The notes under the pieces are model-generated. The model was not told where the DNA came from, did no database searches, and worked only from the letters and a program-made list of their open reading frames with translations. A stretch of 64,000 bases of DNA. Source: Mytilus californianus. Taxonomy: Eukaryota. Positions within the stretch are counted from its first letter, which is position 1, and every line of letters begins with the position of its first letter. This document shows, in pieces, positions 18,304-38,396 of the stretch. The translations under genes were made by a program, and so were the position numbers. The DNA lies in assembly GCF_021869535.1 (NCBI RefSeq), contig NW_026262734.1:22258001-22322000 (forward strand). The letters run 5' to 3'.

Positions 18304-18954
18304 TCATATTTTAGAAATAGTGTATAGATGTAATCCTGCGAAGCCATAAGATTCTAGTTTTTCATCAGCTTTCAGGAAATCACTTTCTTCCACTCTGAAT
18401 CCACCATTGAACCAAGTCCTAAGTTTTTCACAAGTAACTGATAATTCGTCTGCAACGGTCAGATTTATGCATTTATTTCCCATAAGCGATTTGATAATAT
18501 TAACATACTTGTCCTGGTCTGCCAAGTTGACGGCATTAAGAGCACCACTATCCCAAACTGCCCCAAATTCACTTTCAATAGTTGAGTTAAACAGATAGAA
18601 ATCGCAGCAATATAACCGTATTCTTCCATCATCACTTTTATATAATTTCCCTTTGACCTCCGGAATTTCTACAATACTATAATCGATTTTGTTCTCTGCA
18701 AAAAAATCTTTAAGTGCTTCCTCACCACATTCGACGCCGATAACTTCATGTCCTTTATCCCAAAGCCATTTCATTTCTACAACTTTTCCACAAAAGGGGA
18801 TAAACGTTTTTACTTTTTCACGACTGTTTAACATTTTGTCAACATGTTTGGTAAACATCAAGCAAAGTTCTGGTATAACAAAATCTGTTTTACCATCTTT
18901 CCACAATTGCCTCCACTCGTCCACATTCACATCACCAGTATAATCTTCTTCCAT
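18304..18954 (-). CDS. TPMT: Thiopurine S-methyltransferase-like, copy 1 (216 aa, intronless CDS)
   Basis: [25 protein letters not shown] resembles human [24 protein letters not shown]; also LYCCDFY and [10 protein letters not shown]; acceptor tcgtag six nt before the ATG. Confidence 0.9.
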   Translation of the reverse strand: [216 protein letters not shown]

Positions 18955-19547
18955 TACAACCTACGATAAAACATATAAATGCTGCATTTAGAAATAACGA
19001 TATTTTCATGGATTTTCTCTTACAGCGTTGTTAGACTAGGTCAGCAACTACCACACTTTAACCTTAGCGCGTTCTAGAAACACTCATTTCAGAGAGTTTG
19101 GTAGTATAAAAATAAGAGATGTTGTTTGATTGCCAATGATACCACTATCCACCAGCAACCTGAGGACGAGGATGCAATCATTTATAGGTCACCATACAGC
19201 TTTCAACAATAAGCAAAACCCTAACGTTATAACAATTCAAAAGAAAAACCAACAACTCGATCTATTTCGTGCTAAAACAACAAATGAAAAACAATTAAAA
19301 CGGACAGCAACCAACGACAACCACTGAAAAACAAGATCATGACTTGGAACAGCGCTCAAACCCCTACCCTTGGACAGTGTTGTAGTCATTTCTAACGTTA
19401 GATCATCAAAATCTCTTACAATGGCAAACGCTAAAATATTTTTCAGATAAGGTTGGTCTTCAAATGGACAAAAATGCTGGCAGATCTATAATACAATATT
19501 TTAAAAGGAGGACTATTTTAATTGTTGCTGAAATTAAACGTTCTTTC

Positions 19548-19882
19548 TACACAGGCAAATTTTCCGAGGGGCAATACGTGATCTTCACGTTAATTTCACG
19601 TATAATGAGATTCACATGAATTTCATGTGAAATTTTTCATGTGAATATTACAAAAAATGATATTTTTCATATTTTAATTAAATTTGAAAATTAAGATGTT
19701 ATTTGAATAACTTTATTTTGAAAATTCACGTGAATTTCGCATGAAAAAAGTCAGGTCCTCTCGTGAAATCTACGTTAATTTCACATGACATTCACGTGAA
19801 ACTCCCATGAAATCAGTTCACGTGAGTTTCACGTATAAGCTCGTTTGAGGTGAAATTCACGTTAGTGATATTTTCCTGTGTA
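19548..19882. mobile_element. TA-flanked MITE rich in TTCACGTGAA palindromes
   Basis: Ends tacacaggcaaa / ttttcctgtgta with many internal ttcacgt/ttcacatgaa motifs. Confidence 0.7.
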
Positions 19883-34425: not shown

Positions 34426-37400
34426 TATATCTTACATTTCATATATTTGTTAAATCAAAGAAAAAATCCTACCTATAATACTGTGTTAACCCGCCAGTTT
34501 AAAAGTTTATATACCTGGGTTGTACATTACTTGTCGATCTAAATTTAGAGGCAACCAAAGGATGTTTTGTAATATTATTACTGTAAATGATTTTACAAAT
34601 AGATATTGTGACGCCTTGGTATAGTATACGTTCTATTTTTTGAGGCGACCTTGTAGGCTTATTTGATTGATTTTTGCTTGACGGCCAGTGACAAATACTT
34701 CTAACACATTCAGGCTATCTTTTGTTAAATATGTTCATTAAAATATTCAAATCACTGTGAAATATATGGATGTAGTTGGCAAAATTCAAAATTCACATGA
34801 ATAAAAACAGTTAAACATTCAAGCAAAAACACCAAAGGGAATCGAAATGCAAACTTGAAAAAGAACGAAACACAATCAAATCAACTAAGTTGAAAAACAA
34901 AGCAAAACCCAAAACAAGCATTATAAAATAACTAAAAAAAAAAAAAAAAAAAAAAAATAACCATGTACACATGGTACATTTTCTTCCCTCATTTACTTCT
35001 TAGTTATCGTAAAATTACTCACTCATTATTTATTCATTTTACACGTTCCCTATAAATTTGCTTTTCGTTTCAATGGATACTCTAGAATATAATTGAAAGT
35101 ACAAGAAATGAGATGTGTTAGATTAAAATATTTGAGCCGCTGGAACAGGTCACTACAAAACGAAAGAAAAAACATAAAGGCTATAATGATAGACAACCAC
35201 TAATGAGTTTCCTGACATTCGATCAATGGAAATATTAGTCTTTTTTGTTAATAAAGATAACTTATGAAAGCCATTCATATGTATGTAAACATAAAAATAT
35301 TTAAAAATCTCAAATTATATCAAATGGTCTTCATCAGCAAAGCAGAGAAGTAAAATTTGAATTGATGTTAAATTGTTGAAAAACATTATGAGTATACATC
35401 ATTGGAACTTTTTTATATACATAGTCCACGTTATTTTATCAAGCTTATGAATTTTGACCCCATGAGTTTAAAAACTCTACAGGATTCACAACACCTCAAT
35501 TTACGAAACATACAATGTAATAAACTAAGATGTTTTTGTGACTTTGTCTGTTATATTTAAATTTGGAATCTCGCTGGATATGAACACGAGATTTTGGGTT
35601 TGAGTCAATGAGACATCAACCCAACGACCCTAAAACAATTTGACATTTCGTTTTTTTTTTTCGTTTTTATTTTTTTAATTTGTCATATGTGAAGAGATCG
35701 AGCAGAGACGCAAACACTAGATTTATAATTGATAATAATTGCTTGCTTGCATGGGAGTTATCTTTTCCTTCAAATTTTGGAGCATGTATTATTTCTCTTC
35801 AAAGTATCAATGTACATAATAATAAGAACTAGGGGTAGATGTGGGCGATAGCTATAATGCAGCTAATTCAAAGAGAGGCGAAAGATACCAAAGGGATATT
35901 CAAACTCATAAGTCGAACACAAACATGAAATGCCATGACAAAAAAAAAAAAAAACGAAAAACGACCAAAGGACAAAAAAAAACCCAGCATACAAAACACT
36001 ACATACAAAAACTAAAGACTGAGCAACAAAAACCCCACAATAAACCAGGAATGATGTCAGGGACTCAGAATGGTTAAGCAGTGTTACAATAATGCAACAA
36101 CATAAGAAAATCACGAAATAAAAAAAAGATTACGTTAATGAATAATGTAAATTCAGAAATTATTGCTGGATGAGTATCGCAACAAAATCCTACCTTTTAA
36201 TACTGTGTTAACCAGCCAGTTTAAGCGTTTATATACCTGGATTATACATCACTCGTCGATCTAAACTTAACTCACTTCCGACATGTTTTTGCGGTCTTAG
36301 ATCTTTCGATACTAGTAAAGACGTCTGGTCTCATTACATTGTAACAGGGATTTGACATATTCCTTACAAAAAGAAACTGCTCCAATATAGTAATGAGGAC
36401 GAACGACTGAAATCGACACTACAACGTTTTACGGTCACCATCACGATATATCGGTGACTTAACTCACTTCCGACATGATTTGTGGTCTTAGATCTTTCGA
36501 TACTTGTAAAGACGTCTGGTCTGTTTACCAATTGATTCCTATACCCGATTGTGACATTTTTCTGACTGCGAATTCGCAAGGCGGGTAATACCTACATAGC
36601 AGGAAACGCTTACCCTGTTGGTGCACCCGATATTGCTCCGTTTTGACGTTCATATTATATGATTCTGTTTGTTACCTTCATTTGTCTCTAATCGATTTTA
36701 AACATCGGTTAACTATTTCTGTCGCCTAAATTAATCTTTGTTTTCAATGACTAAATATTTATGTGGAAGTCTACTAACTCTTCTTGTTCATGATTCATTA
36801 CCGGATCTACAAATGTGCAAAAGTACTTTTGATTAATGACTGATAGTACACCAGCCCGGTATCGACCAAGGAATTGCCGAATATTCGGAACAACTTTTCA
36901 GGTTTCTTTTGTTGTTTTTTTTCTTGCTTTTCTGTTTGTTTTGGTTATAAATAATCTATTTCTTTTTGTGTGCTGTTATGATTTGTCTTTCATCGGTTAA
37001 CATTATTAACCGATACTTCTCCCTACTCCTCAAGATATTTTTAGATTCCACAAAGATAATAAAGCATCGTGTAAACTGATTTTATCCTTTTAGATGTTCT
37101 CTTCCTTGTTTAATTAGTAAATCTGTAATTTGATATTATTGAAATGTGTTTTTCTGTTCTGTTGTTCACCAATATTCTTACAATATTATATACCGATTTT
37201 TATCACTACCGCTAAGTTAAAGTTAAACGGAGGACTACAACCAAATTCACTCGCGGATATATTCAACTTATTTATAGTAGCCACAATCCCATTCCATTTT
37301 CATCGATTGATATCACCAATTTCAACGTATTACCATTTTTTTTTATGTCAGCCTGGCGGGTGAAAATATAGTGAGCCGGAACTGTCTTCTCGTACAAAAT

Positions 37401-37745
37401 GACGCAGTTGACACCGGCTTTTGGTGGGGTTCGTATTGCTCTATTTAATTTTGTGTGTATTGTTATGTTGACTGTCTTTTTTTTGCGTTTTTCTCTTGTT
37501 TTTTTTTCTGTTTTTGTACAACCTTTTGTCTTTGATTGCACACTAAGTGACTTCTTCCCCTTTGTTCTACTAACATTGTAAGCAACAAGATTGCATGTAG
37601 GATTCAAGACAGGAAGTTCAAAACTGAATAATGGTTTATTACTTACACAACAACAAGCGAAATCAAATGCAGTTATTCTGTATTATGTTTTACCAAATAA
37701 GAATAAAACAAGATAAGAATTGAGGTACAATGTTAGTACATATTT

Positions 37746-38396
37746 TTATATTTTGGATATAGTGTACAGTTGTTGCCCTTTGATGCCAAAGGATTCTAGC
37801 TTTTCGTCAGCTTTTACATAATCATTTGCTTCCACCCTGAATCCGTCTTTGAACCAAGTCCTCATTTTATCAAAATTAACTGGAATTTCCCAATCCGTAG
37901 CGTCGTCAATAACAGTAAGATTCACACATTTATTTCCCATAAGTGATTTGATGATATCAACATACTTCTCCTGGTCAGTTACGTTGATGGCATTTAGAGC
38001 ACCACTATCCCAAACTGCCCCAAATTTACTTTCAATAGCTGAGTTAAACAGATAGAAATCGCAGCAATACAACCGTATTCTTCCATCATCACTTTTATAT
38101 AATTTCCCTTTGATCTCCGGAATTTCTTTGATACTACATCCAATTTTGTTTTCTTCGAAAAATTCTTTAAGTGCTTCCTCACCACATTCGACGCCGACAA
38201 CTTCATGTCCTTTATCCCAAAGCCATTTCATTTCTACAGCTTTTCCACAAAGGGGGACAAAACATTTAACTTGTTTACGACCGTTTAACATTTTTTCAAC
38301 TTTTTTAGTAAACATATCGCAAAGTTCTGGAATGTGGCTCGTTTTGCCCTCTTTCCAAGCCTTCGCCCACATGTCCACCGTCATGTTTTCTTCCAT
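37746..38396 (-). CDS. TPMT: TPMT-like copy 5 (216 aa from ATG at 38396)
   Basis: [25 protein letters not shown] and [10 protein letters not shown]; the 28 extra N-terminal residues in the ORF track lie upstream of acceptor ttcttttaag|GTTAAAATG and are probably intron. Confidence 0.92.
   Translation of the reverse strand: [216 protein letters not shown]

What the first reader, a model, noticed from the sequence alone, without database searches (positions are those of the whole stretch)
18304..38396. Five-copy array of TPMT-like methyltransferases with a conserved SAM site and remodelled substrate side: candidate diversified small-molecule methylation system
Seen: five head-to-tail paralogues over 20 kb. 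The cofactor-binding stretch [11 protein letters not shown]...VVGVE is almost identical to recalled human TPMT. The N-terminal lid (TDFV/TNH/TDFH/TSH) and the late loop (ADELSV / LDELSV / [11 protein letters not shown]) vary by substitution and indel. Established: TPMT-family enzymes (PF05724) methylate aromatic thiols, bacterial members methylate selenium/tellurium compounds, and vertebrates typically carry one copy. Inference: a filter-feeder expansion tuned to different dietary or environmental nucleophiles (algal thiols, sulfide, selenols, halides). I cannot tell from the sequence whether this array is already described.
Basis: partly seen in the sequence, partly recalled or inferred. Interest (0 to 1): 0.75.

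Follow-up and report, generated by a model that had tools for sequence, protein, structure and literature searches.

The report
Mussel array of TPMT-like methyltransferases
A mussel chromosome carries four intact copies and one broken copy, side by side, of a small methyl-adding enzyme related to human TPMT; they belong to an old, uncharacterised mollusc branch that keeps the cofactor site but has lost the residues TPMT uses to hold its substrate, so what they methylate is unknown.

Summary
The array is real. Five head-to-tail TPMT-family (PF05724) genes lie on the minus strand at exactly the given coordinates. Four are intact (A, B, C, E). The fifth (D) is a pseudogene, broken by a 436-bp MITE and small indels.

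- **Conservation:** the same four-gene order occurs in Mytilus trossulus, so the array predates Mytilus speciation.
- **Selection:** each copy is under purifying selection (dN/dS 0.08-0.52). No 20-codon window summed over the paralogue pairs exceeds 0.55, and paralogues show gene conversion.
- **Expression:** B and C are transcribed from the correct strand. A, D and E were not tested.
- **Structure:** AlphaFold models (pLDDT 94) match human and mouse TPMT (TM 0.88-0.90).

The genes are not canonical TPMT orthologues. They fall in a mollusc lineage, also found in scallop, pearl oyster and limpet, that has a single coding exon, lacks the otherwise invariant GPP[F/H/Y] loop, and has Ser in place of Arg152. 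So most of the "remodelled substrate side" was inherited, not an array innovation. Copy B also has Glu90 changed to Asn.

Two searches with canonical mollusc TPMTs found no Mytilus canonical TPMT.

The idea that the copies are tuned to different nucleophiles is untested and has no positive-selection support. This is a new variant of a known kind, of moderate interest.

The parts
18304..18954 (-). Copy A: intact single-exon CDS, 216 aa. TPMT-like, short-loop class (ADELSV). Phe40 equivalent kept, Arg152 replaced by Ser.
   Evidence: ORF. PF05724 at E 5.9e-33. AF2 model pLDDT 94.0. Orthologues in M. trossulus, M. coruscus and M. galloprovincialis at 86-89% aa, with dN/dS 0.22-0.34.
21761..22399 (-). 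Copy B: intact main coding exon, 212 aa from the ATG at 22399. Short-loop class. Phe40 deleted, Glu90 changed to Asn, one His inserted in WD-H-SG, Leu69 changed to His.
   Evidence: ORF. PF05724 at E 1.3e-30. Alignment columns. Stranded RNA reads at depth about 1. dN/dS 0.24-0.52.
23885..23989 (-). Putative upstream coding exon of copy B. It encodes 35 basic residues (MYRRSERKR...KKAKRQHSDVS) and has a GTAAGT donor at 23884. The acceptor AG is at 22407-22406, in frame with the main exon.
   Evidence: Sequence. The same N-terminal extension appears in the gene models P0003 (M. coruscus), P0007 (M. trossulus) and P0010 (M. galloprovincialis). Not confirmed by reads: depth is zero here, against a B depth of about 1.
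26984..27640 (-). Copy C: intact single-exon CDS, 218 aa. Long-loop class ([11 protein letters not shown]). Phe40 equivalent kept (F22), Ser133 at the Arg152 position, Glu72 at the Glu90 position.
   Evidence: ORF. PF05724 at E 9.3e-38. AF2 model pLDDT 94.6, TM 0.88-0.90 to human and mouse TPMT. Transcribed in three studies, on one strand only. dN/dS 0.08-0.15.
30577..31666 (-). Copy D: pseudogene. A recent duplicate of C, 90.6% nt identical. It is absent from the collinear M. trossulus array.
   Evidence: ORF fragments. tblastn pieces in different frames. C/D alignment showing a 1-nt surplus, a 1-nt deletion and a 6-nt deletion. Collinearity.
30994..31429 (.). 436-bp MITE-like insertion interrupting copy D at about codon 79. 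It has 18-bp terminal inverted repeats (GGTGGCACGGTAGTATTT) flanked by a duplicated TAA.
   Evidence: Sequence reading. Single copy in the window.
37746..38396 (-). Copy E: intact single-exon CDS, 216 aa from the ATG at 38396. The longer ORF to 38480 crosses a likely splice acceptor and is probably not coding. Long-loop class, Phe40 deleted.
   Evidence: ORF. PF05724 at E 1.4e-33. Upstream polypyrimidine tract plus AG. M. trossulus orthologue at 86.6% aa, dN/dS 0.17.

Best explanation
This is a conserved Mytilus tandem array of genes for small cytosolic SAM-dependent methyltransferases with the TPMT fold. The genes are not duplicates of the canonical thiopurine S-methyltransferase gene. They belong to an older mollusc paralogue lineage, called 'TPMT-like 2' here, whose whole CDS sits in one exon. 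That structure most likely reflects a processed (retroposed) copy of TPMT made before bivalves and gastropods split.

The lineage keeps the cofactor pocket: Trp29, Trp33, the PLCGK motif, Glu90, Cys133-Asp134 and Trp150-Asp151 in human numbering. It has lost two acceptor-side hallmarks, Arg152 (now Ser) and the GPP[F/H/Y] loop that carries Pro196.

In the Mytilus ancestor one such gene was amplified to four head-to-tail copies, in the order E-C-B-A along the gene direction. Since then the copies have evolved by purifying selection, local gene conversion and birth-and-death. Examples of the last are pseudogene D here, an extra A copy in M. coruscus, and a B copy with stop codons in M. galloprovincialis.

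- **Shown:** the anatomy, family and fold, lineage placement, conservation of the array, purifying selection, and transcription of B and C.
- **Inferred:** A, C and E are active methyltransferases that bind SAM as TPMT does but accept substrates other than the thiopurine or aryl-thiolate type. The paralogues differ mainly in the N-terminal lid (Phe40 kept in A and C, deleted in B and E) and in the late loop (short in A and B, long in C and E). B, with Glu90 changed to Asn and a possible basic N-terminal extension, is the most likely copy to have a weakened or changed role.
For: - **Family and fold:** PF05724 hits. The best solved relative is human TPMT at E 9e-38, but the sequence alignment stops at residue 162. 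AF2 models have pLDDT 94.6 and 94.0. Foldseek gives TM 0.88-0.90 and rmsd 2.4 A to 2bzg, 3bgd and 2gb4.
- **Motifs:** in a 58-sequence alignment, Arg152 is kept in 28 of the 29 canonical sequences (the other has Lys) and GPP is present in all 29. The four window copies and most of the like-2 clade have Ser (or Ala or Cys) and no GPP. The cofactor columns are conserved.
- **Lineage:** in the trees, the Mytilus copies group with an unnamed metagenome relative (P0006) and then with Pinctada, Pecten and Patella proteins that lack GPP. Canonical mollusc TPMTs form a separate clade with support 98/97.
- **Gene structure:** the like-2 CDS is one exon in Pecten (705 bp) and Patella (693 bp). The canonical Pecten gene spans 6.8 kb, with separate exons hit by tblastn.
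- **Array conservation:** M. trossulus has genes of 216, 220, 249 and 216 aa in the same order, collinear with the window.
- **Selection:** dN/dS is 0.08-0.52, with no region above 0.55.
- **Gene conversion:** A and E are 91% identical in the middle segment against 73% in the 5' segment. C and E are 91.4% identical in the 3' segment, more than either is to its own orthologue.
- **Transcription:** stranded reads cover C at depth 4-15 and B at about 1. Intergenic DNA has zero depth, and three studies are represented.
- **Role of Arg152:** summarised in PMC7705256.
Against: - No enzyme activity, substrate or SAM-binding measurement exists for any member of this lineage.
- Arg152 may matter for catalysis generally, so its loss could mean low activity or none.
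- The like-2 clade has only moderate support (UFBoot 93, SH-aLRT 74).
- The AU test does not reject a tree that joins like-2 with canonical mollusc TPMTs (p = 0.114). The age of the split is therefore uncertain.
- The retrogene origin is inferred only from exon structure. Stepwise intron loss is not excluded.
- Expression of A and E was not tested.
- The model coordinates could not be inspected, so statements about the pocket rest on alignment columns.
Confidence: 0.7

Rival explanations
1. The array is an adaptive diversification in which each paralogue is tuned to a different dietary or environmental nucleophile, such as algal thiols, sulfide, selenols or halides.
For: Four paralogues have each been kept with orthologues across Mytilus species under purifying selection, which fits non-redundant roles. 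The paralogue-specific differences sit at positions that contact substrate in TPMT: Phe40 is kept in A and C and deleted in B and E, and there are two loop-length classes. The 5' lid segment is the most paralogue-specific and escapes gene conversion. A transcriptome paper names a 'TPMT' as a hub gene in M. galloprovincialis transplanted to a sulfide-rich deep-sea site (PMC11729891).
Against: No window has dN/dS above 0.55. The largest remodelling is inherited from single-copy relatives and did not arise in the array. Without the Arg152 equivalent, an anionic thiolate, selenide or halide acceptor is not the obvious expectation. The paper does not say which paralogue it measured and assays no substrate. 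No biochemical data exist.
Confidence: 0.25
2. A dosage or redundancy array. The copies are functionally equivalent, are kept similar by gene conversion, and turn over by birth-and-death. The sequence differences are mostly neutral drift at tolerant surface and loop positions.
For: Gene conversion tracts are present, and dS in the core is low. Pseudogenes and extra copies differ between species: D here, a second A in M. coruscus, and a B with stops in M. galloprovincialis. dN/dS is similar, at 0.20-0.32, in all three regions of the protein.
Against: The four orthologue groups are old and each is monophyletic with support of 96-100, except C at 90/65. The paralogues differ by 14-33% at the protein level, including indels at pocket positions. 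That is more than expected for a purely homogenised dosage array.
Confidence: 0.2
3. The copies are pseudoenzymes or SAM-binding regulators. Having lost Arg152 and the GPPF loop, they no longer methylate and instead act as SAM/SAH sensors or binding partners. Copy B is the strongest candidate.
For: Arg152 is the polar residue most implicated in TPMT kinetics (PMC7705256), and it is replaced in every copy. GPP is invariant in the 29 canonical sequences and absent here. B also lacks the Glu90 acid and may carry a basic, NLS-like N-terminal exon.
Against: The cofactor residues are conserved and under selection in A, C and E. The fold is intact with a confident model. The lineage has persisted since before the bivalve-gastropod split.
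Confidence: 0.1
4. The genes were acquired by horizontal transfer of an intron-less bacterial or algal TPMT or halide methyltransferase gene.
For: The CDS is a single exon. Bacterial TPMTs are of similar length.
Against: The closest solved relatives are vertebrate TPMTs, at E 1e-34 to 1e-38 and TM 0.88-0.90. Bacterial 1pjz scores E 1e-12 and TM 0.65, and plant and fungal halide methyltransferases score TM about 0.7 at 17% identity. The named like-2 members are all molluscs. Every copy has a polypyrimidine tract and an AG 5-6 nt upstream of its ATG, which suggests a spliced 5' UTR. Composition matches the host at about 33% GC.
Confidence: 0.02

Closest known systems
Canonical animal thiopurine S-methyltransferase (human 2bzg/2h11, mouse 2gb4/3bgd; mollusc orthologues in Pecten, oysters, Pinctada, Batillaria)
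   Same: Same Pfam family. Same fold, at TM 0.88-0.90. Identity is 34% over the full structural alignment. The [11 protein letters not shown]...VVGVE cofactor stretch is near-identical, and Trp29, Trp33, Cys133-Asp134 and Trp150-Asp151 are conserved.
   Different: Arg152 is replaced by Ser. The GPP[F/H/Y] loop with Pro196 is deleted. Val156 and Tyr180 are both changed to Asn. The C-terminal third is diverged, so the sequence alignment ends at residue 162. The CDS is one exon rather than a multi-exon gene. The genes form a separate clade from canonical mollusc TPMTs.
Uncharacterised 'probable TPMT' proteins of Pecten maximus (XP_033750330), Pinctada imbricata (KAK3103184) and Patella vulgata (XP_050404586)
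   Same: Same clade in both trees. No GPP loop. Single coding exon in Pecten and Patella. Ser or Ala at position 152 in Pinctada and Patella.
   Different: These are single genes within at least 6 kb of flank, not an array. Identity to the window copies is only 31-39%. The Pecten member still has Arg at position 152.
Mytilus public gene models named TPMT or 'probable thiopurine S-methyltransferase' (M. trossulus, M. coruscus, M. galloprovincialis, M. edulis)
   Same: Direct orthologues of A, B, C and E at 82-93% aa, in the same order in M. trossulus.
   Different: Copy D is specific to this genome. The public names imply canonical TPMT, which the motif and tree evidence does not support.
Bacterial TPMT (Tmp, Pseudomonas syringae 1pjz; selenium and tellurium methylation) and plant or fungal halide/thiocyanate methyltransferases (3lcc, 9h07)
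   Same: Same superfamily, with the Rossmann methyltransferase core.
   Different: Much more distant: E 1e-12 and TM 0.65 for 1pjz, and 17% identity with TM about 0.7 for the halide methyltransferases. From my own knowledge, not tested here, those enzymes retain a GPP-type motif.

Membership tests
Pfam PF05724 (TPMT family, broad sense) | Profile HMM score above the curated gathering cut-off (26 bits) | tested here: met
   A scores 114.8, B 107.2, C 130.5 and E 116.9 bits. The N-terminal fragment of D scores 57.1 bits.
Pfam PF05724 (TPMT family, broad sense) | TPMT three-dimensional fold | tested here: met
   AF2 models of C and A have pLDDT 94.6 and 94.0. For the C model (A's was not searched), Foldseek gives TM 0.88-0.90 to human and mouse TPMT.
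Class I SAM-dependent methyltransferase (active cofactor site) | Glycine-rich motif I (PLCGK) and the acidic residue at the end of strand 2 (human Glu90) that binds the SAM ribose | tested here: met
   Both are present in A, C and E. Copy B does not meet this: it has Asn at position 90 in this genome and in M. coruscus, M. trossulus and M. galloprovincialis. SAM binding itself cannot be tested with these tools.
Canonical thiopurine S-methyltransferase (EC 2.1.1.67 orthologue) | Arg152 (human numbering) in the W-D-R-G motif | tested here: not met
   Ser in A, C and E. In B it is also Ser, with an extra His inserted. Of the 29 canonical sequences in the alignment, 28 have Arg and one has Lys.
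Canonical thiopurine S-methyltransferase (EC 2.1.1.67 orthologue) | GPP[F/H/Y] loop carrying Pro196 | tested here: not met
   Absent from all copies. Invariant in the 29 canonical sequences. The Pfam match for A and B ends at profile position 154-157 of 218.
Canonical thiopurine S-methyltransferase (EC 2.1.1.67 orthologue) | Orthology: groups with canonical mollusc and vertebrate TPMT in a phylogeny | tested here: inconclusive
   The best trees place the copies in a separate like-2 clade (support 93/74), while canonical molluscs form their own clade (98/97). However, the AU test does not reject joining the two mollusc groups (p = 0.114).
Canonical thiopurine S-methyltransferase (EC 2.1.1.67 orthologue) | S-methylation of thiopurines and aromatic thiols | not testable with these tools
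   This needs a recombinant enzyme assay.
Halide/thiocyanate methyltransferase (HOL/HTMT) | Close sequence and structural similarity to characterised halide methyltransferases | tested here: not met
   Only 16-18% identity and TM 0.70-0.72 to 3lcc and 9h04-9h09, far below the match to animal TPMT.
Retrogene (processed copy) | Intron-less CDS where the parental gene has introns, plus poly(A) or target-duplication remnants | tested here: inconclusive
   The CDS is a single exon in Mytilus, Pecten and Patella, against a multi-exon canonical Pecten gene. No poly(A) or TSD remnants are expected or visible at this age. A 5' UTR intron is likely.

The most novel reading that the evidence does not exclude
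Mytilus has lost the canonical TPMT gene altogether. Its only TPMT-family enzymes are this array, derived from an ancient retrocopy whose acceptor pocket was rebuilt (Arg152 to Ser, GPPF loop deleted). The four paralogues would then have split a new, non-thiopurine substrate range between them, possibly not thiolates at all. Copy B would have been redirected to the nucleus by a newly recruited basic N-terminal exon.
Probability: 0.2. Interest if true: 0.6.

Novelty: new variant of a known kind. Interest (0 to 1): 0.42.

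Why it matters
TPMT is a textbook pharmacogenetic enzyme whose natural substrate is still unknown. The mollusc lineage described here keeps the cofactor half of the enzyme and discards the two best-conserved acceptor-side features. Mussels have then kept it in four copies for millions of years. 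That makes it a natural experiment on what the TPMT fold can methylate.

It also matters for practice. Mussel transcriptome studies read 'TPMT' as a sulfide or xenobiotic detoxification marker. These genes are not canonical TPMT, so that reading is currently unfounded.

If Mytilus really lacks the canonical gene, the array is the only TPMT-family activity in a major sentinel organism for marine pollution.

Tried and rejected
- **Horizontal transfer:** rejected. Animal TPMTs are by far the nearest relatives, and all named members of the clade are molluscs.
- **Recent duplication of the canonical gene:** the best trees say no, but the AU test was inconclusive (p = 0.114), so I claim only 'older than the bivalve-gastropod split'.
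- **Positive selection:** pairwise and sliding-window NG86 estimates found no region above 0.55. Proper site models (PAML or HyPhy) were not available.
- **Upstream exon of copy B:** the reading frame and splice signals are conserved in four species, but RNA depth was zero at that exon, with B coverage of only about 1x. It remains unconfirmed. One RNA contig instead continues upstream of the acceptor, to 22539.
- **Rfam scan of 17-40 kb:** nothing found.
- **Literature:** no paper describes the array, the like-2 lineage or a TPMT retrogene. The bacterial H2S/methanethiol methyltransferase MddH paper never mentions TPMT or thiopurine, so it gave no lead.
- **Pocket geometry:** the model coordinates could not be read, so no residue-level 3D analysis was done.
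- **Expression of A, D and E:** I laid 21700-27699.

Full report
**1. What is there**

Between 18304 and 38396, on the minus strand, lie five copies of one gene, head to tail.

| Copy | Coordinates | Size | State |
|---|---|---|---|
| A | 18304-18954 | 216 aa | intact |
| B | 21761-22399 | 212 aa | intact |
| C | 26984-27640 | 218 aa | intact |
| D | 30577-31666 | - | in pieces |
| E | 37746-38396 | 216 aa | intact |

These come from the ORF list. A tblastn search of the four intact proteins against the whole 64-kb window finds exactly these five places and no others. The window has no N runs and is uniformly AT-rich at about 33% GC.

All intact copies match Pfam PF05724 (TPMT) at E 1e-30 to 1e-37. 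The best solved relative is human TPMT 2bzg at E 9e-38. The four proteins are 69-86% identical to each other.

**2. Copy D is a pseudogene**

D is 90.6% identical to C at the nucleotide level. It is interrupted at about codon 79 by a 436-bp element (30994-31429) with 18-bp terminal inverted repeats and a duplicated TAA. It also carries a 1-nt surplus, a 1-nt deletion and a 6-nt deletion.

C and D share flanking homology that the older copies do not. The collinear M. trossulus array has no D. D is therefore a young duplicate that died.

**3. Gene structure**

In every copy the whole CDS is one exon. A polypyrimidine tract and an AG sit 5-6 nt upstream of each ATG, and AATAAA or ATTAAA signals follow 52-105 nt after each stop. 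One RNA contig on C stops matching at that AG. This fits a spliced non-coding first exon.

Copy B has, 1.5 kb upstream, a conserved 35-codon basic ORF (23885-23989). It has a GTAAGT donor and is in frame with the acceptor at 22406. The same extension is part of the public models of B's orthologue in three other Mytilus species. Reads did not confirm it here, because B depth was only about 1x.

**4. Conservation and organism**

The nearest proteins are Mytilus models named 'TPMT' or 'probable thiopurine S-methyltransferase'.

M. trossulus chromosome CM071709.1 has four genes of 216, 220, 249 and 216 aa in the same order and orientation. They are collinear with E, C, B and A. Orthologues are also present in M. 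coruscus and M. galloprovincialis.

Turnover differs by species. M. coruscus has a second A segment, and the M. galloprovincialis B has in-frame stops. The four-gene array therefore predates Mytilus speciation and evolves by birth-and-death.

**5. Selection and gene conversion**

Nei-Gojobori dN/dS between orthologues is as follows:

| Comparison | dN/dS |
|---|---|
| A orthologues | 0.22-0.34 |
| B orthologues | 0.24-0.52 |
| C orthologues | 0.08-0.15 |
| E orthologues | 0.17 |
| Between paralogues | 0.15-0.35 |

The N-terminal lid, the core and the C-terminal third all give 0.20-0.32. No 20-codon window summed over the six paralogue pairs exceeds 0.55.

Synonymous divergence between paralogues is far lower in the core (0.2-0.45) than at the ends (about 1.0-1.2).

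Segment identities reveal gene conversion:
- A and E are 91% identical in the middle segment but 73% in the 5' segment.
- C and E are 91.4% identical in the 3' segment, more than either is to its own M. trossulus orthologue (86-87%).

So the pattern of a conserved core with variable ends reflects both constraint and homogenisation. The lid-coding 5' end is the part that stays paralogue-specific.

**6. Expression**

I laid one stranded raw RNA run and three transcriptome contig sets, from three studies in all, on 21700-27699.
- The C CDS is covered at depth 4-15 on one strand only, with contigs in all four runs.
- The B CDS is covered at about 1x on the same strand.
- The intergenic stretch 22700-25899 is empty in all runs, so these are RNA and not DNA.

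A strong two-strand signal at 26500-26900 is a dispersed repeat.

**7. These are not canonical TPMT orthologues**

A full scan of 1.84 billion representative proteins gave 2443 relatives. Nearly all carry W-D-R-G and GPP[F/H/Y].

In a 58-sequence alignment, Arg152 is Arg in 28 of the 29 canonical sequences (the other has Lys), and Gly194-Pro195-Pro196 are invariant in all 29. The window copies have Ser at position 152 and no GPP loop. They also have Val156 and Tyr180 both changed to Asn. Trp29, Trp33, PLCGK, Glu90, Cys133-Asp134 and Trp150-Asp151 are kept.

The Phe40 position is Phe in A and C and deleted in B and E. Copy B has Glu90 changed to Asn.

According to PMC7705256, which summarises the mouse TPMT/6-mercaptopurine structure, Arg152 and Arg226 are the only polar residues near the substrate. 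Changing the Arg152 equivalent has the larger kinetic effect.

**8. The lineage**

Trees (quick with 97 rows, careful with 54 rows) give a consistent order of relatives for the Mytilus copies. First comes an unnamed metagenome relative, P0006. Then come proteins that all lack GPP, among them Pinctada imbricata KAK3103184, Pecten maximus XP_033750330 and Patella vulgata XP_050404586. This clade has support 93/74.

Canonical mollusc TPMTs (Pecten, oysters, Pinctada, Batillaria, Littorina, Gigantopelta) form a separate clade with support 98/97, placed with the other canonical-type sequences, vertebrate TPMTs among them. Pecten and Pinctada have both kinds.

The like-2 CDS is a single exon in Pecten and Patella. 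The canonical Pecten gene is multi-exon over 6.8 kb.

An AU test does not reject joining like-2 with canonical mollusc TPMTs (p = 0.114). The duplication is therefore at least as old as the bivalve-gastropod ancestor, but it may be mollusc-specific. A processed-copy origin is the simplest reading of the exon structure, and it is an inference.

In an unnamed AT-rich eukaryote from ENA metagenomes, P0006-type and P0013-type like-2 genes, which are 37% identical, also cluster within 9 kb. Clustering of this lineage is therefore not unique to Mytilus.

**9. Canonical TPMT in Mytilus**

I ran word-seeded searches with canonical Batillaria and Saccostrea TPMT. They returned oysters, scallops, Pinctada, gastropods and many vertebrates, but no protein named Mytilus. 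This is despite several annotated Mytilus proteomes being in the collection.

This suggests loss of the canonical gene in Mytilus but does not prove it.

**10. Structure**

AlphaFold models of C (pLDDT 94.6, pTM 0.91) and A (94.0, 0.91) have the same strand and helix order. The stretch between the long strand and the following helix is 8 residues in C and 5 in A.

Foldseek places C on human 2bzg and mouse 3bgd and 2gb4 with TM 0.88-0.90 and rmsd 2.4 A. Bacterial TPMT (TM 0.65) and halide methyltransferases (about 0.7, 17% identity) are far behind.

**11. Reading**

- **Shown:** a conserved, transcribed, selectively maintained tandem array of TPMT-fold proteins from a distinct mollusc lineage, with an intact cofactor side and a gutted canonical acceptor side.
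- **Inferred:** they are active SAM-dependent small-molecule methyltransferases with an acceptor range unlike that of TPMT. The paralogues differ mainly in the lid and loop. B is the most altered copy.

The literature mentions 'TPMT' in Mytilus only as a hub gene or a GO term (PMC11729891, PMC11203016). I found no description of the array or the lineage.

I tested it, and it holds.

**12. Verdict**

This is a real feature. The public annotations carry a misleading name. It is a new variant of a known family rather than a new kind of system, and of moderate interest, mainly as a lead for enzymology and as a caution about how mussel 'TPMT' expression is interpreted.

Noticed in passing
window 26670-26781 (also about 44158-44268, 47180-47291, 56476-56588, 29705-29795 and others): A dispersed short repeat of about 110 bp has at least nine copies in the window. 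It draws very high RNA depth on both strands (hundreds to tens of thousands of reads) with many loose ends. It is probably a SINE- or MITE-like element embedded in many transcripts.
   Followed up: partly
L007:6257-6892 (M. galloprovincialis UYJE01007217.1): The orthologue of copy B has in-frame stop codons in this assembly. The public 193-aa model skips part of the domain. B, which is also the copy with Glu90 changed to Asn, may be decaying in that species.
   Followed up: partly
L006:8514-10666 and 17916-20059 (M. coruscus CACVKT020000584.1): The copy A segment is duplicated in tandem in M. coruscus. The second copy reads in more than one frame, so it is likely a pseudogene. This is a lineage-specific duplication parallel to copy D here.
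   Followed up: partly
L011:10001-18928 (ENA ERZ21930238 ctg20499l) and L003/L012: An unnamed AT-rich eukaryote in metagenome assemblies has three like-2 genes within 9 kb: one P0006-type, one intact P0013-type, and one P0013-type with a stop. This is a second, differently organised cluster of the same lineage. The organism was not identified.
   Followed up: partly
proteins P0023-P0029, P0033, P0041: The representative library holds proteins of 450-700 aa with two or three complete canonical-type TPMT domains, each with WDRG and GPPH. These are either true tandem-domain fusions or gene models that merge tandem genes in other organisms.
   Followed up: no
(Batillaria scaffold, Ostrea edulis, Saccostrea cucullata, Crassostrea virginica): Canonical TPMT is itself present in two or three linked copies in several molluscs. 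Multi-copy TPMT-family genes are therefore common in molluscs and are not peculiar to mussels.
   Followed up: no
window 38399-38480, minus strand: The ORF of copy E extends 28 codons upstream of the conserved ATG, across a likely splice acceptor. Gene finders may over-extend this start.
   Followed up: partly
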